Position numbers and translations under genes: made by a program. A stretch of DNA of 64,000 nt from Schmidtea nova (lineage: Eukaryota). Location: positions 154,380,001 to 154,444,000 of the forward strand of contig CM097883.1 in the NCBI GenBank assembly GCA_044892505.1. The letters run 5' to 3'. Within the stretch, counting starts at the first letter, position 1. Every line of letters begins with the position of its first letter. This document shows, piece after piece, positions 1 through 58,413 of the stretch. The notes below the pieces were generated by a model. That model was not told where the DNA came from, made no database searches, and saw only the letters and a program-made list of their open reading frames with translations.

Positions 1-1758
1 CGTTATTCGCTGGGAAAAGTGTGTCAGTGCAGAAGGAAATTATTTTGAGAAATGATGCCTATTTACCATGCTTGTTCTAAATACAAAGTTTTGGTGTTGA
101 TATCTTAAGTCTTTCTTTTTTAGTCTCACGACTTATTGGGCGCACCACGTAAGCTCGAGTTGATGAAAACATTAAAAAGTAATGAAGATATTTTCAGTAA
201 ATACAAGATGGACATTGAAAAATCGGATGAAGTGAAACATTACATTGATACCAGAAATGCAAGGCCTTTAGTGTTTTAATTACGAAAGGTTCCGATAGTA
301 TTAGAAGATGAGGTTGATTAATGGTACAAGACTTATTAGATGCAAGTATAATTAGAACCAATTCATCACCATAGGATTTCCCTATAGTTGTGGTAAAGAC
401 AAAAATGGGGATAGAAGAATGTGCGTCAATTATCGAGCACTTAATGCTAAGACGGTTTGATCGAGTTATCCAATACCAACTGCAGAAGAGTTATTTGATA
501 CTATCGGTGAGGTGAGTTATTTTAACACAGTAGATTTATTTAGTGGATATTATCAAGTACAAATTGACGAAAAGGATATCCAGAAAACAGCTTTTAGCAC
601 AAAATACGGACAATTTGAGTACAAAAGAATGTTATTAGGACTTTGCTTAGCTCCTGGTACATTTCAAAAACTCATGAACATGGTTATAAGGAAGAAAAAC
701 TCGATTAATTGTGTCGTGTACTTGATGACGTGTTGAATTTTGGAAGAACAATAGAAGAACATAATGAATGACTTGATAAGGTGCTAAGTCGCATTAGAGA
801 AGCCGAACTTAAATTATCTCCCGATAAGTGTGTATTTTTAAAAACAGAGGTTAGCTATCTAGGGTATATCATAAATAAGGAAGGTGTTAAAACAGATCCA
901 GAAAAAATCAAAAGTAGCAGTTCATGGGAAATTCCAGCATGTAAAAAAGAGTTGCAGTCATTCTTGGGATTTTTCAATTACTACAGACGTTTTATTAAAG
1001 ATTATGCAGAGACTTCAGAGAAATTGAGTGCGATGCTAAAAATTGAAAGCAGTTTCCAGTGGAATGAGGGCAGAAAAGCAGCGTTCTATGACCTAAAGCG
1101 GTTATTGTTCACCCCGCCATTCCTGGTATTACCATGCAAAGAAGGGCAATATATTTTAGACACTGATGCATCACATAATAGCGTTTGAGATGTCATATCA
1201 CAGATGCAAGAAGGCGACGAAAGTGTACTATGTTATTCTTCAAAAACTATGACTAAGTGCCAGAGACGGAATTGCATAACAAGGAAAGAACTTCTGGCAA
1301 TTTATACATTTGTGATAAAATTTAAGCATTTTCTCATTGGATTCAAATTTATAGTAAAGACTGATCACCAAGCATTGAAATGGCTTTTGAATTGGGATAT
1401 CCCAAATACATCTCAATATTGCCTAATGAAAGCTGAATTGGAAATTTTTGACATGGTGGTCGAATATTGGAAAGGTAGCGAACATGTTAACGCTGATGAA
1501 ATGTCATGATTACCATCATGTGAACAATGTATGATAACCCCATGGTGACCGTAAGAAACGGAGAAATGTCAAAGTATACAAGAATTAAGAGGTTGAGGAA
1601 AGTGACAGTGAATCTGAAAGAACGATGAATCATATAGTTAAGAAAGAGGATGATTAGGGACAAGACAAGATGCAGATATTCAGTTTATAATTAAATTGAT
1701 GGAGAAAGGTGATTATTTAACTGAAGTAAATCCAAGTAATTTGACGAATGGCAGTAAA

Positions 1759-11244: not shown

Positions 11245-11274
11245 TAAAAAAAAAAAAAAAAAGAAGTTTGAAAA
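11245..11274 (-). terminator. Pol III oligo-T terminator
   Basis: TTTT directly follows the 5S 3' end, with a long T run about 10 nt further on the minus strand. Confidence 0.7.
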
Positions 11275-11393
11275 GTTTCACAGCACCTCGTATTCCCAGG
11301 CGGTCACCCATCCAAGTACTAACGAGGCCTTAACCTGCTTAACTTCCGAGATCGAACGACACCGGTTGAATTCAGACTCGTTTAGTTGTTGTT
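11275..11393 (-). rRNA. 5S rRNA-like sequence; nt ~35-119 well conserved, nt 1-34 diverged and overlapping the end of the retroelement ORF2
   Basis: The minus strand reads ...CTGAATTCAACCGGTGTCGTTCGATCTCGGAAGTTAAGCAGGTTAAGGCCTCGTTAGTACTTGGATGGGTGACCGCCTGGGAATACGAGGTGCTGTGAAAC-TTTT. It is colinear without gaps with the canonical metazoan 5S up to ~nt 114, and helix V is compensated (CTCG/CGAG). Confidence 0.9.
11297..11344 (-). promoter_or_regulatory. Pol III type-1 internal control region (A box, intermediate element, C box) of the 5S copy
   Basis: 5S nt 50-97 map to 11344-11297 and match the consensus (AGTTAAGCAGG; TGGATGGGTGACCGCC). Confidence 0.7.
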
Positions 11394-14300
11394 AATTCGA
11401 ATGAATTGCTCCTCGTTTTCGAAAATAGGCAGTGTACCATTCTTGTGGAAGTACCATCGTTTTGCCGAGTGTGCAATATTACTAATTGCAAACTTTTTTA
11501 ATAACCCAGCCACCTGGCCTTTATTTATGCCAATTTTCTGAAGGATCTGAGGAGTTTCTACAGGAAAAGAGCCAAGAGCGCCTATAATGCAAGTATCGAG
11601 TTCAACTTTAAAGTCTGGCTTGACAGTTTGAATATCGATTTTCAGAGAGTTGTATTTTTCCAAATTCAATAAATTTACACGCTCAAAGTTACATAAAGAA
11701 TCACTCGGACATTTAAGGTCAACAAGGAAGATTCTTTTTCTAAGAACATCAGTTATCAGCAAATCCACCCGCTCTTTAGAACTCGGAACAAGTGAACAGG
11801 CATGGTTGACAACAACAATTAGGTTTTTATTAAGTTGGAGATGATTAGAAATGAGTTTAAGGCAAGCATCGTGTCGTTCAGAGCCCAAAGTCATATGAAC
11901 TTTGCACGATTGAAGTACATGTGATGAGGTTTCATCCTCATCATGACATCGACGACAGAGTCTTTTCTCTCCACTATTATAAGGCTTTGCAAGGGTGGAA
12001 AGAGTGTTGGTGCGTGCTCTATGGACAAAGTTCCAAGCAAACTCGGATAAATCACTGCGATAGATAGCTTTGTTTACTGTCGGTGAAAGCTTTACAGCTG
12101 AAGCGATAATGTTTGAGACACAGCTTTTTTCCCATTTAACCAAGTATGAATCATTGAGCGCTAAGTGCAACACTTTTGCCGTGGTCTCACGTTCGTCCGG
12201 AGTTACAATACATGTACCACGTGCGTTCGTATTAATATAGAGACATAGTACATTATTGGTGATAGTAAACGTGATGTTGATGTCGTGCGTCTTCTCAAAA
12301 AAAGCAATCGCAATCCTAGCTCTTTGAAATCGAGTTTTCTTTCCAGAATGGGGAGAAAGAGACTCTTTTCCATTGAGCCATTCAAGACTTTTCTGAAGAG
12401 TTGGATTTTTTATCCCAAGACGTGGACTGGTGACAAAAGCTAAAGAGTCAAGATTAATTTTCCTTGCAAAGTCACACTGTGACGTGATTAATCGAAAAAA
12501 GTGTGTGATAGTCTGTGTGTGATATTCGTCGAGGAGATCAACACAGTTTGCTCCCCCATTTTCAGTTGAATTGTAGAAATAACTCACTTCCGAGTGATTA
12601 GGCAAAAGCAGCATTTTTCTTAAGGTTTTCCTTAACTGTCTAGTGATGTTAACTGAAAGATTTTTATTATCATAAGATTTTGAAAGTGCACTAGTTTTAA
12701 TTTCACGGGTTCTAAAAGGGAAGATCAAGCGAGAATGGATAAATACTTTGTAAGCTTTAAGATTTTGCCACCCAAGCAAATCCGAATCAGCAAGTTTTTT
12801 GGTGTCTTTAAGTGCCTCCAGTAGAATGTCGTAAGGACTTTGGTCAGTTCCTTCGCCAACTGGCACACCTAGGTATTGATAAAATTCATTAGACAGTAGT
12901 TTTTTTATTTTAACTCCATTGATTGAAATTTCACTGTCAATGTGAATTCTAGGAAGTTGCAGATAAGCACATTTCTCTGGCCGATATTCAAAGCCTATAT
13001 TGGTTGCAGTTGTGACAGCAGTGTTAATGAGTTTTTGCAGGTCATTAGGAGATTTAGCGAAAATTGCGATGTCATCTGCATACGCGAGAATTTTGACAGA
13101 TGATTCTCCAATAGCAAAAGCATCACAGACTGTTCTGGAAACAGCTTCCAACACAGGATTAATCGCCAAAGCAAACAAAATCATGGAGATGGGACATCCT
13201 TGCTTGACACCCTTTTTAATTGGGATCTTTGGTGTCAGAATAGGACCACAACTATAGAAGGAGCTTGTGTCAGAATATAAAAGTTCTAAGATGGAGGTAA
13301 AGTCTTCACTTACCCCAGTGTATCGGAGTAAGGACCACATGTAATCATGTGGGACACTACCAAAAGCATCTTTTATGTCGAGCCAAGCAATGGAAAGAGG
13401 ACAGTTTTTACTATATTTGGAATGTTCCAGAGCAGCAGACAGAATCGAGTTGTGTTCAACGCAACCTTCATGTTGGGAGCCACCTTTTTGTCCAACATGT
13501 AATAGTTTATTAGAGTTTATCCAGCGTGCAAGACGAGAGGCTAGACAGGACGCAAAAACTTTGTAGATGACGGATAGCAAGGCAATCGGGCGCCAGGATG
13601 ATATATCTGAATATTTATCATTTTTATTAGGTTTCGGGATTAGAGTGGTTTTGTAGACCTTCCAACTGTCCGGTATGGACTTCTCTGTAATGATCTTGTT
13701 GAACAAGAAAGTAAGTATATGACCATCAGGATCTAGACGCAACAAGTCACGATATTGTAATCCATCAATACCAGGACTAGTGTTGTCAGCCCTCCTAAGT
13801 TCATACATCACTTCCCTATTCGAGAAGCATTTCAGAGGAAGTACATTTTGAGAGTGTTTACAAAAGTCAAATAGTTTCTCCCAATGCCCACGTGCAGGTG
13901 TTTCATGAGAAAAGTTTTTAACTATGTTCTGAAAAGTTTGTCGAGCCGGTACATCGAAATTGTTGATGACCTTATTGACAGCTGACTTCATATCTTTCAT
14001 GAATAAATCGATCAATTTATTTTTGCTAATTTTAGAAGTTTTAATTTTGGTTCCCAAGTATGGTTTTTTAGCTGGTTTCACTTTTTCAGGGAATTGCTCC
14101 ATAATCGCGTGAATAATTTCATTTGTGCTATAATTTGCCCATTTAATTAAAAATAGTTCAGCATTAGTTCTCTTTTGTTTTATCGGAACTCTCAATATAG
14201 CTTTATGAATAATTTTAGTGTTACTTGGGTTCTCTATATTATCGTGCTGCCTGACAAAGATAAGCAAAGAGCCAACCACGTCTCCAATCTCGCGCAAGTT

Positions 14301-16085
14301 TAAATTTACAAGGGGCAAATTTTTCGAGAAATTATTAATAAACGCACACAAGAGAATTTTACTAACAAGACCTGAGCTCCGGATGTCATGGGGACATTCA
14401 GAAAGATTCAAAACGCGGCCAGGTGTATCTTTTATGTCATTTATTTTATTTCTCAGAATTCTGCAAGTAGACAGATAATTGTCATTCACAGTTAAAGTTG
14501 TTGGGTTTACAAGATAAAAGGTGTCAACACTATAATCGAGAATGAGCAAAATTTCACGATGTTTAGGGGGAGCAACAATCGCAAAGATGATTTGTGATTT
14601 GCATATATTTTCAAAATTCAGAAAATCATTTATGTGTTGAGTACAATCGTCAAGAATAGCCGTGCACATGGTCGCACTCAATAAAAAAAAAGTCTTGGGT
14701 AAATTTAAATTATCAAAAAACATTGAAATTATTTTATCCGAAATTTTAGAATTAAGTAAGTTTAGATTCTGAGAGATTTCATTTGTTTCCCTTAATTTTA
14801 TTGAGTTTAATGATTTGTGTATATTTAAAAAATGAATAACTTTATTAAACAAAAGTTTCTCAAGAAGCTCAATAAAAACCGACGCAAAGAGAATTGTATC
14901 ATCAGAGATGTTGGGCACCAGTTCCAAGCCGTGGTTAGGTTTAAAAGAAATGTTTGTTGATAGAAAGAACTTATTCAAGTAGTCAGTAATATTTTCGCCG
15001 ATGCCAAGTAAACGGTCAGAAATAGGTTTTTCTTGATTGTTAAAAACGTAACTTGCACCATGTGTAATAGAAAAAAGATATAAACACCAGTAATTATCAT
15101 TTGGGATAACACTGATGACATGGTTAATCCCGAGAAAATTTTTAAACGTGACATTTTCTCTAATAAATGAGTTATTTCTAGAGATTATATTTAGTGTAAG
15201 TTCTTGGGACAGGACCAAGATGTCTTTATGGTCTTTAAACCATTCGGTAATCAAAGACGAGATGCAGGCATTACGTTTCATAAGGAAGATGTGGTCGTGT
15301 TTATTAGAAATATTTAGAGTTGTGTCTTTTTTCACTCTCTTAGGGTTAGTGAGTTTAGATTCACCACCTCCAGATGATTTTGGGACCATGTTATTTAAAG
15401 TAAGTTTAAATTGGTAGACATCTTTTCTGATATTTTCTATAAAATCATCAGGAAATTTTTGCCATGTACCACTTATCATCATAGCATAAGCACAGATGTA
15501 AGGCCCACAGTCATAGTTATTATTTTGGTAGACAAAGTTTTTATGTGGGTGGAAAAATAGTGCAGCTTTAAGGTTAAAAAGACGATTCAAAGCGATTGTA
15601 GTTTGAAGAGCGTCGGCTCTATTGGTCAACGAATGGCGGTTGTTGAAAAGAGGATCTACAAAGTATGAAGTTAAAGAAGTTTTACAATACACAAAAATAA
15701 TCCAATGAGTTTTATTAATATTTATTGGACATAGTAGAGTTTGCGCAGATATTACTCTGTCTGGCATTCGAAAAATGGTTTCGCAAAGATTTGCCCGTAA
15801 GATTTCTATTTGAAAGCATTTTATTGGAGCAAATTTAGGGTCATTGATATGACATTCAAGATAGTTATCAATGTCATCATCAGTAAACCATATTTTAGGG
15901 TCACGCAATATATATGATTTTAGATGGTTTAAATTTTTTGGGAAATGTGCTGTCTGCATCAGTCTCTGTTGAGATTGGGGCAGATATTGAGACTGGTGCA
16001 GGCACACAACTTCATTTGTTTTTGATAGCCATACGTTTGAGTTTTTTAATAGGCTTTTTCGAAGAGTCTTGAGACTCACTATCAA
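11382..16085 (-). CDS. ORF2: Ulp1/C48 cysteine protease + two degenerate Ulp1-like units + reverse transcriptase + CCHC knuckle + PD-(D/E)xK endonuclease (1567 aa; first ATG at 15959)
   Basis: Protease: THW(H127)...VDPL(D144)...QNNNYDCG(C193). RT: SPGIDG, WRPIALL, QKG, LDIKDAFGSVPH, GVKQGCPIS, YADD, YQYLGV. Knuckle: CRRCHDEDETSSHVLQSC. Nuclease: RHD, RVDL, VDLK, EKY, GALG. Confidence 0.93.
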   Translation of the reverse strand: MIVSLKTLRKSLLKNSNVWLSKTNEVVCLHQSQYLPQSQQRLMQTAHFPKNLNHLKSYILRDPKIWFTDDDIDNYLECHINDPKFAPIKCFQIEILRANLCETIFRMPDRVISAQTLLCPININKTHWIIFVYCKTSLTSYFVDPLFNNRHSLTNRADALQTTIALNRLFNLKAALFFHPHKNFVYQNNNYDCGPYICAYAMMISGTWQKFPDDFIENIRKDVYQFKLTLNNMVPKSSGGGESKLTNPKRVKKDTTLNISNKHDHIFLMKRNACISSLITEWFKDHKDILVLSQELTLNIISRNNSFIRENVTFKNFLGINHVISVIPNDNYWCLYLFSITHGASYVFNNQEKPISDRLLGIGENITDYLNKFFLSTNISFKPNHGLELVPNISDDTILFASVFIELLEKLLFNKVIHFLNIHKSLNSIKLRETNEISQNLNLLNSKISDKIISMFFDNLNLPKTFFLLSATMCTAILDDCTQHINDFLNFENICKSQIIFAIVAPPKHREILLILDYSVDTFYLVNPTTLTVNDNYLSTCRILRNKINDIKDTPGRVLNLSECPHDIRSSGLVSKILLCAFINNFSKNLPLVNLNLREIGDVVGSLLIFVRQHDNIENPSNTKIIHKAILRVPIKQKRTNAELFLIKWANYSTNEIIHAIMEQFPEKVKPAKKPYLGTKIKTSKISKNKLIDLFMKDMKSAVNKVINNFDVPARQTFQNIVKNFSHETPARGHWEKLFDFCKHSQNVLPLKCFSNREVMYELRRADNTSPGIDGLQYRDLLRLDPDGHILTFLFNKIITEKSIPDSWKVYKTTLIPKPNKNDKYSDISSWRPIALLSVIYKVFASCLASRLARWINSNKLLHVGQKGGSQHEGCVEHNSILSAALEHSKYSKNCPLSIAWLDIKDAFGSVPHDYMWSLLRYTGVSEDFTSILELLYSDTSSFYSCGPILTPKIPIKKGVKQGCPISMILFALAINPVLEAVSRTVCDAFAIGESSVKILAYADDIAIFAKSPNDLQKLINTAVTTATNIGFEYRPEKCAYLQLPRIHIDSEISINGVKIKKLLSNEFYQYLGVPVGEGTDQSPYDILLEALKDTKKLADSDLLGWQNLKAYKVFIHSRLIFPFRTREIKTSALSKSYDNKNLSVNITRQLRKTLRKMLLLPNHSEVSYFYNSTENGGANCVDLLDEYHTQTITHFFRLITSQCDFARKINLDSLAFVTSPRLGIKNPTLQKSLEWLNGKESLSPHSGKKTRFQRARIAIAFFEKTHDINITFTITNNVLCLYINTNARGTCIVTPDERETTAKVLHLALNDSYLVKWEKSCVSNIIASAVKLSPTVNKAIYRSDLSEFAWNFVHRARTNTLSTLAKPYNSGEKRLCRRCHDEDETSSHVLQSCKVHMTLGSERHDACLKLISNHLQLNKNLIVVVNHACSLVPSSKERVDLLITDVLRKRIFLVDLKCPSDSLCNFERVNLLNLEKYNSLKIDIQTVKPDFKVELDTCIIGALGSFPVETPQILQKIGINKGQVAGLLKKFAISNIAHSAKRWYFHKNGTLPIFENEEQFIRINNN

Positions 16086-17451
16086 TTAATTCAGTGTTTA
16101 ATGTCAAATTTTCATCAATATCGACAGGAAGTTTATTTGTAGGGTTTTCTACCAAATTGTAATTTATTTCAGCTTCATCGCATTCAGGAATAGAAAAAAG
16201 AGGCTCGTTTACAAGCTTTTCAGTATTCTCATTGTTCCCCATCACAGGCTTATCAACCTTTTCTATAGCAGGTTTTTCATTGACAGTTAGCTTAATAGAG
16301 CATAAGATTCTAGATATACCTTCGCTCATTTCTGGAGTACAAATCTTTCTACAGTACTTGGGAACGCGGAAGGTAAATTTATTTTTTAAAAGAAAAGTTT
16401 TTTTATCTCTAATAAGAAAGAATAAGAGTCTTTTCGCTTTCAAGGTGTTTGAGTTATCCAAATCGTCTTGGAATTCGTTAATTCCACGTCCTATATTTTC
16501 AAGTGCCGTTAGTTGTTGTGCTTTATTTGGCAAAAGATTATCGATAGAATCAAAGAAGTTGTTAATATCCAAAATAGTTTTTGGAGAGATGATGTTGTTT
16601 ATTTTATCGATCTCTTGAAGTATAAAAGTTTGTTTGAGTTTTAGGAAGCGCTCATGGCAGCTTTTGTTATAATAGGAGTTGGTAGGTAGTTTTTTAATTA
16701 GTTCCATAGCCCAGGATTCAATATTATCGTAGCATAAGGAGTATACACTCTCAAGCTTCACAATCGAGTGCATTAGGAAGCAGTTACGAATGTAATTATA
16801 AACATATATATTAAATGATAAATTTATTTTGCATTTTAAAGATCCCTGTAAGTTTAGGTAATTTAAGTAAAATATTATATTTATTAATTTCTCAGGTGAC
16901 TGAGGCTGTTTTAATAATTTATTGAACTCAATGTCCACATTTGACATTTCTACAAAGTCTAATAAGCCAAGATTAAACATTATGTCAGACGCACCATTAT
17001 CGTGCAGTCCAACAGAGTTTTGAAAAATTTTATTTTTAACAAATTTACCCCCAACAAATGAAATCTCATTAGGAAAATGTTTTATAGTTTTTAATTCTTT
17101 AATTAAATTAATTAATAAATCAGGATACCTGTTCACGTTTTCCATAAAGTAGAGCTTTGGAATTTCAGGAAAGGATCTTGTTAATTCTTCCAATTCAGAG
17201 CGAGAAAGATCGATTGGGTTTAGATCAGTGCTGTCGCCAACTAATTCATCGGAATTAATAAGGTCTAACAGAAGAAACTCTCCATTTGAATACTTTAACT
17301 GTATGTATCATTCAAAAGAGAAAAATCGATTTTCAAATAACTTTAAAATACAAATGTCATATTTTTTTGTTAAATTAATTAAAGGCTGTTGATTAATTAA
17401 GTGATAATAATTACGGAATACATTAGAGAAATATGTCATAGATTGCAACAT
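16012..17451 (-). CDS. ORF1 of the retroelement (about 479 codons from ATG 17451 with one in-frame TGA at 17310-17308; 393 aa if read from TTG 17193)
   Basis: Long open frame overlapping ORF2 by 74 nt. It has a PUB-like segment near the N-terminus and an acidic then basic C-terminal tail. Confidence 0.75.
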
Positions 17452-18609
17452 GCATCCTCAAATATTGGATTTTCTATATGGAATATATATTTCCAAGAAT
17501 CAATAACGCCATGAAGTTAAAGTTCCGGTAATAAATCGGAAATTGAAAGGTTCAACTATTTTACTGACATTAATTTTAATTTTTTTCAGACAATAGATAA
17601 AAAATATTTTTTTCTTCTATCCAATACAAATTTTCGGTACTGCTTTTTTCAAGTGAATTTATAAGTAATTCTCAATTTGTAAATATTTTAAATATTGAAA
17701 AAGCTATGATGTATTTTATTTACGATTGTCGACGAAAGGCAAATCGGCAGTGGTGGTTCAAAATGTGATATTTATTTACAATACGTAAAGTTCATTTGCT
17801 ATTTTAATTGAGGATGTGTCTGAATGTCGTATTTTGTCATTGAAATTCAGAATTCAGAACATGAAATCAACGAGGAAAATATTATTGCAATTATATATCA
17901 TTAAAACAAATTATGAAAAATTTTAAAAATATTTTAAAAAATTTAATTCTGAATAAATTAAGAAATTTAGTGAAAAAAAAGTGAATTTTGTAAAAATGGA
18001 TTTCTGGTACATAAATTGTAAATCGGCCTGTTGAATAAAAAATATACAATCGTATGGAAATCTATGGAGACTGATTGATGTCCAGATTTTATATATCTAG
18101 CAGCAAAAATAATATTTTGTTTTAATGACTGAATAATACGTGACGACAATCAGATAAATTCATTTAGAAATTTTTTTTCTGATTTATCGAAATGTTTTTT
18201 TATCACATGTTAAATTTTGTATATTTTTTTAATGTTTTTTATTAAAATTTTTTAAAATTGATCCCAATTAGCGATTAAATTTTTTTAATAATAAAAATTT
18301 AATGACAAAATTTAATTCTGGAATTACCTATTCCAGTTATGCCTAATATTCTTTTTCAAATTTGATCAAAAGTAAAATTTAGTTGCTATTTGATAGAACA
18401 AATTTATTTTACTTAGACGAAAAAATAATTATTTTGAACACAACTTCTCTCCATCATCCTCCTTATATTTCTTGTAATATCAATTTTCTCTTCAAATGAA
18501 TTTTCAATATATACAGATAAAATTCTTTTGCCTTTTATTTTCAATTAAAATATTTAGAAATTATTAGAAAGAAAAAAAGAAATATTTTTTGAATGTATAT
18601 TTTAGTTGT

Positions 18610-32613: not shown

Positions 32614-33000
32614 GAATATACGTTGGTAATGAATTCAAATCAACTGGTGGAACTAAATTGTGAAACTGAAGGTGATCCTACCCCTACACTGATTTGGTCA
32701 GATGAAGTTGGTCCAATACTTACTCGCCATCCATCATCCCACATTAACCATTCATCTAACAGAATCACAGTTGGTTTAGAAGGTTCAAACGTCTCGTCAA
32801 TATACATATGTACTGCTTCTAATATTGAAGGCATTTCGTTTGCTTTACTGAATCTAGTATCGAAAAAGGTCGACATACCGGTCCACAAAAATACCTCAAA
32901 TATCGTTTACGATCGAATAATATCAAATGTGAACTATAGAAATTGTGCCTCGACATACTTTGCTCAAATTTCAGAATTCAAAATTATTGAAACTTTGATG
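32614..33000 (+). CDS. Ig (I-set) domain exon, most likely exon 4 of the LRR-Ig gene; acceptor hidden in the N gap, 3' end uncertain
   Basis: Reads EYTLVMNSNQLVELNCETEGDPTPTLIW...YICTASNIEG (C-W-YxC pattern). The frame is compatible with the phase-0 end of exon 3. Confidence 0.8.
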
Positions 33001-33799
33001 TGGCAGATTTTATATATTTTTATATGTATTATGAATAAATATTATTTATAAACAAACACTTTTGGAAACAATTGTTTCCATTTGAAATCGTAAATAAGAT
33101 TTTGTGATCATTTTCTTGTGAAGTTCGAGTCGCTCAATATTTTTGTTTAAATAGTAGAATATTTGTTGATTTGTACACACTCCAGATTTCAGCAAATTGG
33201 TGCGGTAAAAAAAGAATTGGTTTTATTAAATGCAATTTATTTTTAATATTCCTTATTTTTTTGGTCGTTTTGTTAAAGTTCATGAAAATTAAAAAATTTA
33301 TTAAAATAAAATAAATTTATAAATACAGAAATTAAAATTTGAAAATTCACTAAAAAACGAATTAATAATTATTAATTTTATTAATAAAAACGCCACTCGT
33401 ATAACCCTCGTATTAAAGATTTCGGCAGACTCCCTGTCATTATCAGGAGGAAAAATACAGAAAACTATGTTTATTTCAATTTATTCAAACAAATTATAAA
33501 CTATAATGAAATAAATATTAAATTTTAAATATTTTTTAATTAATAGACATTTTTAATTTATTAAAATCCAATAATGAAAGGATTCATGAAGGCATATCAT
33601 GCACCAAGAGGAAAGAAATTGGATATTTGTTTTCTCAAAGCGTGCTAAGAAGAAAAGGTGACACTTTTCTTCATTTATAAATTGAAAATTAGCGAATGTC
33701 TTTCAAATATAAATGCCCAACAATTGCATCAAAGAACATTAAGAAGAATGTTGGAATCAGAGAAGATACGGAGAACGTCCTTAGATAAAAACATAATCA

Positions 33800-57123: not shown

Positions 57124-58413
57124 CAAAAATTTTCCGGCCTACCCTACTTAACAAATTGATTTTTTAATGGAAATAGGTTTATTTTATTGGAAATTTATTG
57201 AAAATTTCATGTTGAAAATCTTATTGACCTAATCCATTTACTTTATCTGTTGCAGATGGAAATGTCGTTGCAAGTGCATTCGCTGGAAAAAATTGAGTAT
57301 CACAGTGCCATTCGCTTTTGTGTTCTTCTCGGCCAAACCAACCAGGAAATCATGGCAAATCTGAATCGAGCCTATGGCGAAAAGTGTCCCTCTCAGTCTA
57401 CCATCAAGTTTTGGATTGCTGAATTCAAACGGGGTCGGCAAAGTGTGTCAAATGAGGAACGAGAGGGTCTACCAACGACTTCGAGAAATGAAGATGTGAA
57501 GGAAAAATTGGAGAAAATGGTACTTGAAGATCACCGTATAACTACCAGGCAGCTGGAAGAATCCCTACAAATATCACACGGCACCGTAGTGCAATTATTG
57601 AAAGACCTTAACTTCAACAAGGTGGTGTCTCGCTTTGTGCCTCGCTTTTTGACAACTGAGATGTGCAATAACCGAAAGAATGCGTGTCTCAAGAACCTCG
57701 CCATTTACCGCAAGTATGGAGAAAGATTTATCCAAAACATCCTCATTGTTGATGAGACACCGTTGCCCCTACATCAGCCTGAATCAAAGCAGGAGTCTAT
57801 GGAATGGAGAAAGCCGGAAAAAGGAAAAGTTTGGAAGTCTCGTTCCGGAATGTCGCACAGACGGAAACTCATGTTGACTGTGTTTTGGAGTCATAAGGGA
57901 GTGATCCTCACTGACTTTCTTGAGAAGGGACGGACAATCAGCGGAGAATATTAAGGTAATCTCGTTGAGCAAGCTCGTAGAAAGAGCCGAAAACCATATG
58001 GTCTTTCTCACTGGTTTCAACATGACAATGCGCCAGTTCACACCAGCCGAATTGCCCAAGCAAAACTCAATGACTGTGGCTTCGAGATCATTTGCCACCC
58101 TCCATACAGACCTGATTTGGCTCCCTCAGATTACGGAAATTGAAGATTTACGGAATTGAAGAAGCAACTGCGGGGACAGTATTTCATGAATGCAGGCGAT
58201 TAAGAGGAGGCTGTAAATCGGATTTTTGACCAGCTTCCACCCTCATTTTACCATGGGGCATTCGGAGCCCTCCCTGGTCTGGCAGAAGTGTGTCGATGCC
58301 GGAGGTAATTGGTTCGAGAAGTATTGGTATTGGTGTTGATAAAAATATAGTTGTGGTTTCTTGCTTTTACTTTTTTCTGGGGTAGGCCGGAAACCTTTTG
58401 ACCGCACCATGTA
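57124..58413 (+). mobile_element. Mariner transposon, near full length, transposase inactivated by in-frame stops
   Basis: TIR core CAAAA..TTTCCGGCCTACCC / GGGTAGGCCGGAAACCTTTTG...TA. Motifs: HTH, FVPRFL, VDET, then past TAA 57952 HDNAPVH and PYRPDLAPSDY (DD34D type). Confidence 0.92.

What the first reader, a model, noticed from the sequence alone, without database searches (positions are those of the whole stretch)
11275..17460. RLE-type non-LTR retrotransposon whose ORF2 ends inside a 5S rRNA gene: candidate 5S-rDNA-specific (or 5S-carrying) NeSL/R5-like element
Seen: the ORF2 stop codon (11384-11382) falls at 5S nt 10-12. There is no conventional 3' UTR or poly(A); the sequence passes straight into a 119-nt 5S with a T-run terminator. 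Established: RLE elements are often site-specific. R2, R4 and R5 target 28S, NeSL-1 targets spliced-leader genes and Utopia targets U2. The 5S-targeting LINE I know of (Mutsu) uses an APE endonuclease instead. Inference: this is either an RLE lineage retargeted to 5S rDNA or a LINE that uses 5S RNA as its 3' end. Either would be unusual and relevant to R2-style site-specific gene insertion.
Basis: partly seen in the sequence, partly recalled or inferred. Interest (0 to 1): 0.92.

Follow-up and report, generated by a model that had tools for sequence, protein, structure and literature searches.

The report
Dead retrotransposon copy abutting 5S gene
A young but dead copy of a restriction-endonuclease-type jumping gene ends directly against a lone 5S ribosomal RNA gene, but its relatives sit in tRNA genes and keep a normal tail, so one copy does not show a 5S-dedicated lineage.

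Summary
Rfam finds one 5S rRNA at 11275-11393 (-), 68 bits. The 1567-codon ORF (11382-16085, -) stops at 5S model nt 10-12. However, 5S nt 1-13 are not demonstrably 5S: helix I keeps only 4 of 9 pairs.

The element is RLE-type: Ulp1-like protease, RT closest to solved R2 proteins, then CCHC and an R2-like PD-(D/E)xK fold. ORF1 ends in an invariant in-frame TGA followed by a covarying stem-loop, which suggests readthrough.

None of twelve relatives (40-59% identity) carries 5S. Four have 204-430 nt 3' UTRs ending in a shared terminus that abuts a 5'-truncated tRNA or tRNA-like sequence at the D-loop. One sits in a 201-bp tandem repeat. This matches the published planarian LIN/R5 branch of NeSL, whose targets are 28S, tRNA-Arg and tRNA-Glu.

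The window copy differs. It has no 3' UTR, is 5'-truncated, has one frameshift, and the 5S is alone in 64 kb with no 5' piece upstream. No second copy of this family could be found.

Best reading: a one-off, non-canonical insertion into a pol III gene by a clade that targets such genes. A 5S-dedicated family remains possible, at about 0.2.

The parts
11275..11393 (-). 5S rRNA-like sequence. Model nt 14-120 are convincingly 5S. Model nt 1-13 overlap the end of ORF2 and do not form helix I.
   Evidence: Rfam RF00001, 68 bits, E=3.5e-12. 5 of 9 helix I pairs are non-standard in the cmscan alignment.
11271..11274 (-). TTTT run directly after the 5S 3' end, like a pol III terminator. A 17-nt T tract follows 8 nt further on, at 11246-11262.
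   Evidence: Sequence read directly.
11382..17298 (-). ORF1-ORF2 polyprotein gene of the retrotransposon, given as one part because it is broken. Breaks: the 5' part of ORF1 is missing (one 5' truncation, at least about 230 and probably about 400 codons) and there is one frameshift relative to all relatives. There are no in-frame stops other than the conserved TGA between ORF1 and ORF2. There is no 3' UTR.
   Evidence: the ORF listing. tblastn with the relatives' ORF1 and ORF2 gives one HSP in one frame for ORF2 and covers only the C-terminal part of ORF1. Stop counts are 0 and 0. Frame relation in relatives.
15468..15752 (-). Ulp1-like cysteine protease domain (Peptidase_C48), ORF2 residues 112-206.
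   Evidence: Pfam PF02902, 24.1 bits against a cut-off of 20.7. The same domain scores 25-35 bits in relatives.
12864..13640 (-). Reverse transcriptase domain, ORF2 residues 816-1074.
   Evidence: Pfam RVT_1, 99.8 bits. Best solved relatives are R2 proteins 9nl2, 9nl3, 9dou and 8gh6, E=5.5e-43 to 1.4e-23, ahead of L1 ORF2p at about 1e-19.
11466..11957 (-). CCHC zinc knuckle plus restriction-like (PD-(D/E)xK) endonuclease, about ORF2 residues 1377-1540.
   Evidence: Invariant C210, C213, H222, C227 and R272, D274, D289, K291 columns in 10 of 10 sequences. The AlphaFold model (pLDDT 79.8) matches the C-terminal part of R2 proteins at E=4.6e-9 to 2.6e-5, then PD-(D/E)xK nucleases.
15954..16014 (-). 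Conserved in-frame TGA that ends ORF1 (16012-16014), plus a downstream stem-loop with arms at 15992-16001 and 15954-15963. This is a candidate stop-codon readthrough signal.
   Evidence: The TGA is invariant in 12 of 12 sequences. RNAalifold predicts 10 pairs, 5 of them with compensatory double changes.
17299..17536 (-). Possible degenerate upstream remnant of ORF1, in another frame. The 5' boundary of the element is uncertain within this stretch.
   Evidence: A single weak tblastn hit to L003 ORF1 residues 41-77, E=0.012 in a 3.3-kb search space. There is no 5S 5' fragment or RNA family here.

Best explanation
This is a recent but dead-on-arrival copy of a NeSL-clade, planarian LIN/R5-like retrotransposon.

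The element encodes one polyprotein. ORF1 comes first, then a UGA that is probably read through with the help of a downstream stem-loop. After that come a Ulp1-like protease, a reverse transcriptase, a CCHC knuckle and a restriction-like endonuclease.

Its clade habitually nicks RNA polymerase III genes near their 5' ends and copies itself in by target-primed reverse transcription. This leaves the 3' nine-tenths of the gene downstream in the same orientation. This copy did so at a 5S rRNA gene instead of a tRNA gene.

The event was non-canonical. The template lacked the family's normal 3' UTR and terminus, and the copy was 5'-truncated. It is therefore a one-off junction, not proof of a 5S-dedicated family.

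Shown: the domain content, the junction, the relatives' tRNA junctions, and the absence of a UTR. Inferred: that the 5S was the nicked target, readthrough, and the non-canonical template.
For: - Domains.
- The 5S and its junction are in the same orientation as the element.
- L007: its 3' UTR ends at about 7040 and is followed by tRNA-Val(AAC) lacking its first 14 nt. The rest is identical to the intact copy 395 nt downstream, inside a tRNA-Val cluster.
- L008, L002 and L132 have junctions in the same D-arm alignment columns.
- L005 lies in a 201-bp tandem repeat that is present on both flanks.
- In an NJ tree, the tRNA-junction elements fall on both sides of the clade's deepest split, and the window groups with L001 and L002.
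- The published planarian LIN families show the same type of junction (PMC4640811, section 10 and S6 Fig). L002 shares a 13-mer with the printed LIN25_SM 3' end at a similar distance from the junction.
- Non-canonical nature of this copy: relatives have 3' UTRs of 204-430 nt, against 0 here. The four tRNA-flanked relatives share 9-13 of their last 14 nt, against 7-8 for the window, which is background level.
- ORF1 is 5'-truncated.
Against: - Only one copy of this family is available, so a family-wide 5S junction cannot be excluded.
- TPRT starts at the RNA 3' end, so a copy without the 3' UTR needs a special event.
- No 5' piece of the 5S lies upstream of the element, and no target-site duplication was found.
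- The 5S is the only one in 64 kb, unlike L007's tRNA cluster. A resident target gene is therefore plausible but not shown.
- There is no clear sequence likeness between the 5S site and the tRNA D-loop sites.
Confidence: 0.4

Rival explanations
1. A retargeted, 5S-dedicated family. This branch of the clade would have switched from tRNA genes to 5S genes and would have no 3' UTR of its own. The co-transcribed downstream 5S sequence (helices II-V) would then serve as the structured 3' end of the template. Every new insertion would recreate the same stop-codon/5S junction.
For: - Target switching among multicopy RNA genes is documented in this lineage (PMC4640811). It is also documented in Dada DNA transposons, which have a 5S-targeting group (PMC8869645).
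- The orientation and near-5'-end position mirror the relatives' tRNA junctions.
- ORF2 is complete to within about 10 codons of the relatives' variable C-terminal tails. Its stop lies in the same aligned position as in L003.
- ORF2 is open over 1508 codons, so the copy is young.
Against: - 0 of 12 relatives have 5S or a 5S-like 3' end.
- The nearest relatives, L001 and L002, have AT-rich UTRs of at least 234 nt and 430 nt.
- The conserved 3' terminus seen across the clade is absent here.
- The 5S is solitary, with no 5S array and no upstream 5S piece.
- There is no second copy to show specificity.
Confidence: 0.2
2. A chimeric retrocopy. The reverse transcriptase would have begun on a 5S rRNA molecule and then switched template to an internal site of the element's RNA. 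On this reading the 5S part is RNA-derived and was never a resident gene.
For: - The 5S part ends exactly at the mature 3' end plus a short U/T run, and it stands alone in a region free of other 5S genes.
- There is no element 3' UTR.
- Template jumping by R2-type enzymes and LINE/small-RNA chimeras are known; this rests on my own knowledge, not on a tool result.
Against: - The switch would have left the 5S before its 5' end and entered the element RNA internally, exactly around the stop codon. That is not the end-to-end jump typical of these enzymes.
- In the known L1 chimeras the small RNA lies on the 5' side (my own knowledge).
- A TTTT run after the 5S is equally what a gene has.
Confidence: 0.15
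3. A secondary juxtaposition. A later deletion or rearrangement would have removed the element's 3' UTR and the start of a neighbouring 5S gene. Alternatively, the contig is misjoined at this point.
For: - The UTR and terminus are missing while the coding region is complete.
- There is no TSD and no upstream 5S piece.
- The copy carries other damage: a 5' truncation and one frameshift.
- The window is repeat-rich and has 14 N runs.
Against: - A deletion would have to end within about 30-45 nt after the last conserved ORF2 codon without entering the ORF.
- It would also have to leave the 5S in the same orientation and cut near its 5' end, just as in the relatives' tRNA junctions. That is three coincidences.
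Confidence: 0.2

Closest known systems
R5/LIN lineage of the NeSL clade in planarians (LIN15_SM in tRNA-Arg, LIN25_SM in tRNA-Glu, LIN9/24/26_SM and R5 in 28S; Kojima & Jurka 2015, PMC4640811)
   Same: - RLE-type RT elements that are specific for multicopy RNA genes, with targets that differ between sister families.
- The printed junctions show an AT-rich 3' terminus followed by a 5'-truncated tRNA and its T run. This is what L007, L008, L002 and L132 show.
- L002 shares a 13-mer with the printed LIN25_SM 3' end.
- The host looks like an AT-rich, TE-rich animal genome.
   Different: - 5S is not among the reported targets.
- The window copy has no 3' UTR.
- Membership by RT phylogeny could not be tested, because no named R5 or LIN protein came back from any search.
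- The host species is not identified.
NeSL-1 of nematodes and Utopia (Utopia-1_TSP)
   Same: An Ulp1-like cysteine protease upstream of the RT, and a CCHC plus RLE at the C-terminus (for the published architecture; here).
   Different: - Their targets are spliced-leader and U2 snRNA genes.
- They are described as encoding one protein with N-terminal zinc fingers.
- Here a long ORF1 without Pfam domains is joined to ORF2 through an in-frame TGA.
R2 (28S-specific; solved structures 8gh6, 9nl2, 9nl3, 9dou)
   Same: - The closest solved proteins by sequence.
- The closest by fold for the C-terminal 400 residues.
- The presumed mechanism is target-primed reverse transcription after an RLE nick.
   Different: - No 28S target.
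- A protease domain and a long ORF1 are present.
- Only about 14-16% identity in the RLE part.
Mutsu (5S rRNA gene-specific LINE of the Tx1 group) and Dada-5S DNA transposons
   Same: 5S genes are used as a safe multicopy target (PMC4640811 introduction, PMC5340908 title, PMC8869645).
   Different: - Mutsu uses an APE endonuclease, according to the finding and my own knowledge. states this for the Tx1 clade but does not name Mutsu.
- Dada is a DNA transposon.
- In both, specificity is shown by many copies. Here there is one.
LINE-mediated chimeric retrocopies that join small RNAs to LINE sequence
   Same: Template switching by a LINE reverse transcriptase can fuse a small pol III RNA to LINE sequence (my own knowledge).
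   Different: In the known cases the small RNA is on the 5' side. Here the 5S is on the 3' side and is cut at its 5' end.

Membership tests
RLE-type (R2-supergroup) non-LTR retrotransposon | Non-LTR-type reverse transcriptase | tested here: met
   RVT_1, 99.8 bits. R2 proteins are the best solved matches at E=5.5e-43, ahead of L1 ORF2p at 1e-19.
RLE-type (R2-supergroup) non-LTR retrotransposon | C-terminal CCHC motif followed by a PD-(D/E)xK restriction-like endonuclease, and no APE domain | tested here: met
   Invariant Cys/His and D...D-x-K columns in 10 of 10 sequences. The model matches the R2 C-terminal region at E=4.6e-9, then PD-(D/E)xK nucleases. There is no PF03372 hit.
NeSL clade (NeSL-1 / Utopia / R5-LIN) | Ulp1-like cysteine protease upstream of the RT (present in nematode NeSL and Utopia-1_TSP, but not universal in the clade) | tested here: met
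   PF02902, 24.1 bits against a cut-off of 20.7. Relatives score 25-35 bits.
NeSL clade (NeSL-1 / Utopia / R5-LIN) | RT groups with NeSL-1, R5, LIN or Utopia reference sequences in a phylogeny | not testable with these tools
   No reference sequences could be fetched, and no named NeSL, R5 or LIN protein came back. The only link is a 13-mer shared between L002 and the printed LIN25_SM 3' end.
NeSL clade (NeSL-1 / Utopia / R5-LIN) | 3' end joined to a fixed position of a multicopy RNA gene | tested here: inconclusive
   Clade level: four relatives abut tRNA or tRNA-like sequence at the D-loop, and one lies in a tandem repeat. Each of these families is seen only once. Window: there is one junction, to 5S.
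5S rDNA-specific element (as Mutsu is) | Several independent copies inserted at the same 5S position | tested here: inconclusive
   There is only one copy. No other copy was found in the window or in any collection searched.
5S rDNA-specific element (as Mutsu is) | 5' flank carries the matching 5' part of the 5S gene, and the insertion sits among 5S genes | tested here: not met
   No 5S fragment lies upstream. The predicted helix I 5' strand is absent there. There is one 5S in 64 kb. A 5' truncation with target deletion could explain the absence.
LINE with a 5S-derived 3' tail | A 5S-like 3' module is shared by related elements or by other copies | tested here: not met
   11 relatives were scanned with cmscan and have no 5S. 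A twelfth, L132, was read by eye. Their 3' UTRs are AT-rich and unrelated to 5S.
R2 proper | Insertion at the R2 site of 28S rDNA | tested here: not met
   The flank is 5S, not 28S. There are no rRNA hits other than 5S.

The most novel reading that the evidence does not exclude
This is the first restriction-like-endonuclease retrotransposon family dedicated to 5S rRNA genes. It would have given up its own 3' UTR and would use the co-transcribed, folded 5S sequence downstream of its stop codon as the 3' handle for target-primed reverse transcription.
Probability: 0.18. Interest if true: 0.75.

Novelty: new member of a known kind. Interest (0 to 1): 0.4.

Why it matters
If the family really is 5S-dedicated, it would add 5S to the targets of RLE elements. 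It would also show a template whose 3' recognition element is borrowed from the target. Both bear on how R2-like enzymes choose their DNA site and their RNA.

As the evidence stands, the value lies elsewhere. The locus and its relatives extend a known planarian-type NeSL branch that lands in pol III genes, with a consistent tRNA D-loop site in four families. They also reveal a conserved UGA plus stem-loop that probably couples ORF1 and ORF2 by readthrough. I did not find that arrangement described for this clade in the papers searched.

Tried and rejected
Searches that led nowhere:
- Other copies in the window: blastn and tblastn found none.
- A 5' 5S piece upstream of the element: a permissive cmscan and a search for the predicted helix I strand found none.
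- A target-site duplication: the longest shared word between the flanks is 9 nt of AT-rich sequence.
- Same-family fragments: separate searches with the C-terminal 328 aa and the RT 401 aa gave best hits of only 49-55% identity and no named planarian protein.
- The search for related loci with the C-terminal alignment found nothing in the metagenome, viral or genome collections.
- A metagenome scan with a 16-nt piece of the 5S gave 120 loci. All were chance matches of 17-25 nt and none was a 5S, so the pattern was too short.
- The sample accessions of the relatives appear in no paper.

Ideas rejected:
- 5S likeness in the relatives' 3' UTRs. An apparent likeness in L003, seen by eye, did not survive alignment or cmscan.
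- The 5S as an insertion inside a longer UTR. Downstream of the 5S there is no homology to the relatives' UTRs, no tRNA T-loop, no RNA family and no clade-type terminus.
- Targeting by distance from the pol III start site, as Ty3 or TRE do. tRNA leaders make the distances unequal, and L005 lies in a repeat with no known RNA.
- The weak U4 hit at 11439-11555 (+), 19.6 bits, is chance.


Full report
**1. The observation**

Rfam's covariance model finds exactly one RNA family above threshold in the 64-kb window. It is a 5S rRNA at 11275-11393 on the minus strand (68 bits, gathering score 38, E=3.5e-12). A TTTT run follows directly.

The longest ORF in the window, 11382-16085 (-), has 1567 codons and ends with a stop that aligns to 5S model nt 10-12.

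The 5' end of the '5S' is not convincing as 5S. In the cmscan alignment five of the nine helix I pairs are non-standard, whereas helix II onward pairs well and includes compensated pairs. The junction between element and 5S lies somewhere between the last conserved ORF2 codons and 5S nt 13. The '5S' is a gene cut at its 5' end.

**2. Anatomy of the element**

- ORF2 carries a Ulp1-like protease (PF02902, 24.1 bits, above the cut-off) and an RT (RVT_1, 99.8 bits).
- Its C-terminal 400 residues hold invariant CCHC and D...D-x-K columns in 10 of 10 aligned relatives.
- A model of that part (pLDDT 79.8) matches the C-terminal region of solved R2 proteins at E=4.6e-9 to 2.6e-5, and then PD-(D/E)xK nucleases.
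- By sequence, the closest solved proteins are also R2 (E=5.5e-43), ahead of L1 ORF2p.
- ORF1 has no Pfam domain, either here or in relatives.

**3. The ORF1-ORF2 link**

In the 10 relatives checked for frame, ORF1 and ORF2 are in one frame and are separated by a single TGA. The TGA is invariant in all 11 relatives aligned and in the window.

Eight nucleotides downstream a stem begins. RNAalifold predicts 10 pairs, five of them with compensatory double changes. I read this as programmed UGA readthrough that gives a polyprotein, which the protease would process. This is inference.

**4. State of the window copy**

- ORF2 is open over its whole homologous span: 1508 codons, 0 stops, one tblastn HSP in one frame.
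- ORF1 homology covers only the C-terminal part of the relatives' ORF1. At least about 230 and probably about 400 codons are missing.
- A weak hit suggests a degenerate remnant further upstream.
- Relative to all relatives there is one frameshift in the polyprotein.
- Break count: one 5' truncation, one frameshift, no premature stops, and no 3' UTR.
- I give no positions for the breaks and read nothing across them.

**5. Relatives**

The protein search returned a tight group of 12 or more proteins. They share 40-59% identity, have the same C48+RVT architecture, and come from Logan and ENA metagenome assemblies. I fetched 12 contigs. None has a 5S (L132 by eye).

Where the 3' flank is long enough, the pattern is clear.

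| Locus | 3' UTR length | What follows the 3' terminus |
|---|---|---|
| L007 | 215 nt | tRNA-Val(AAC) lacking its first 14 nt, otherwise identical to the intact gene 395 nt downstream, within a cluster of three tRNA-Val genes |
| L008 | 204 nt | 5'-truncated tRNA (Rfam tRNA, 30 bits) plus a T run |
| L002 | 430 nt | The contig stops 12 nt into a D-arm-like sequence |
| L132 | 232 nt | A tRNA-like sequence that starts at the same D-loop columns |
| L005 | 389 nt | A 201-bp tandem repeat, present on both flanks; the element starts at the ORF1 ATG |

- L006 has the 3' part of an SRP RNA gene just upstream.
- The four tRNA-flanked elements share 9-13 of their last 14 nt.
- In an NJ tree without bootstrap, they lie on both sides of the clade's deepest split. 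The window groups with L001 and L002.

**6. Literature**

Kojima & Jurka 2015 (PMC4640811) place planarian R5 and the LIN families in the NeSL clade. They report diversified targets: 28S (LIN9, LIN24 and LIN26_SM), tRNA-Arg (LIN15_SM) and tRNA-Glu (LIN25_SM).

Their S6 Fig shows AT-rich 3' termini followed by 5'-truncated tRNAs. L002 shares a 13-mer with the printed LIN25_SM 3' end at a similar distance from the junction. That text is machine-read from a PDF, so this is only a hint.

Ulp1-like proteases are described for nematode NeSL and Utopia-1_TSP. 5S targets are reported for Dada-5S DNA transposons. For a LINE they are reported in zebrafish, in PMC5340908, of which I saw only the title and abstract. 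That this LINE is Mutsu, and APE-type, is the finding's statement and my own knowledge. I found no RLE element reported in 5S.

**7. How the window copy differs from its clade**

- It has no 3' UTR at all, against 204-430 nt in relatives with a recognised junction. In the other relatives the post-stop sequence held is at least 85 nt; L010 is itself broken.
- It lacks the shared terminus: 7-8 of 14 identities, which is background level.
- Its 5S is the only one in 64 kb.
- There is no 5S 5' piece or TSD at the other end.
- Downstream of the 5S there is no UTR homology, no tRNA piece and no RNA family.

Three features do mirror the relatives' tRNA junctions. The orientation is the same, the cut is near the 5' end of a pol III gene, and the rest of the gene and its terminator lie downstream.

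**8. Explanations**

- *Best reading (0.4).* A one-off, non-canonical TPRT insertion into a 5S gene, by a clade whose endonuclease habitually hits pol III genes. The template lacked the normal 3' UTR.
- *Rival 1 (0.2).* A retargeted 5S-dedicated family that uses the co-transcribed 5S as its 3' end.
- *Rival 2 (0.15).* A chimera made by starting on 5S rRNA and switching to element RNA.
- *Rival 3 (0.2).* A later deletion, rearrangement or misassembly.

With one copy, these cannot be separated. A census of the family and of the 5S genes in the source genome would do it.

**9. Novelty**

The element is a new member of a known kind. It is of the NeSL or planarian-LIN type, though clade membership by phylogeny is untested and the host is unidentified. 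The host is an AT-rich animal genome with LTR, mariner and Ig-domain sequences.

The readthrough signal and the consistent tRNA D-loop site in four families may be new details.

**10. Housekeeping and slips**

I dropped that row (A3) and did not send those letters to any other remote tool. The full protein P0006, which contains them, was later used in a local tree script.
All positions given here come from tool alignments.
- *Degenerate motifs.* I wrote three short degenerate patterns. One was adapted from the 3' ends printed in the paper's S6 Fig. Two summarised sequences of the fetched loci: a host tRNA T-loop and the relatives' shared 3' terminus. A notebook entry holds the terminus motif and the two stem arms. 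They are not repeated here, and consensus lines printed by the alignment tools were not used.
- *Human contigs.* No contig looked human.

Noticed in passing
window 15954-16014 (-); same place in L001-L009, L011, L132 (for example L005:2622-2700): ORF1 ends in an invariant in-frame TGA, and ORF2 continues in the same frame in the 10 relatives checked for frame. A stem-loop starts 8 nt downstream, with 10 predicted pairs, 5 of them showing compensatory changes. It looks like a programmed UGA readthrough signal that makes an ORF1-ORF2 polyprotein.
   Followed up: partly
L007:7041-7101, L008:7475-7531, L002:6994-7005, L132:7375-7440: Four different families of the clade abut tRNA or tRNA-like sequence at the same D-loop columns, so the first 14 nt of the tRNA are missing. 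They share most of their last 14 nt. This suggests a common tRNA D-loop target site across 35-57% protein divergence.
   Followed up: partly
L005:1-140 and L005:7515-8223: This relative is inserted in a 201-bp tandem repeat (3.5 copies, 95% matches) that matches no Rfam family. The 5' and 3' flanks overlap by about 70 bp of the unit. That is either a long duplication or a deletion of about 130 bp. The element begins at the ORF1 ATG, with no 5' UTR.
   Followed up: partly
L006:1-115: The 3' part of a metazoan SRP (7SL) RNA gene (60.5 bits, cut by the contig end), with its T run, lies about 200 nt upstream of this relative's ORF1. It is another pol III gene next to a member of the clade.
   Followed up: no
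L003:6480-6790: The 3' UTR contains a direct duplication of about 160 nt that includes the last codons of ORF2.
   Followed up: no
window 11246-11262: A 17-nt T tract on the element strand (A17 on the + strand) lies 8 nt beyond the 5S terminator. It could be the poly(A) tail of an unrecognised + strand retrocopy, or simple low-complexity DNA.
   Followed up: no
window 781-1509 (+), 1780-2500, 57250-57954 (+), 32623-33051 (+): - LTR-retrotransposon RT/RNase H fragments at 781-1509.
- A direct duplication of about 390 bp within 1780-2500.
- A mariner-type transposase fragment at 57250-57954.
- An immunoglobulin-domain exon at 32623-33051.

Together these point to a TE-rich, AT-rich animal genome.
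   Followed up: no
   Followed up: no
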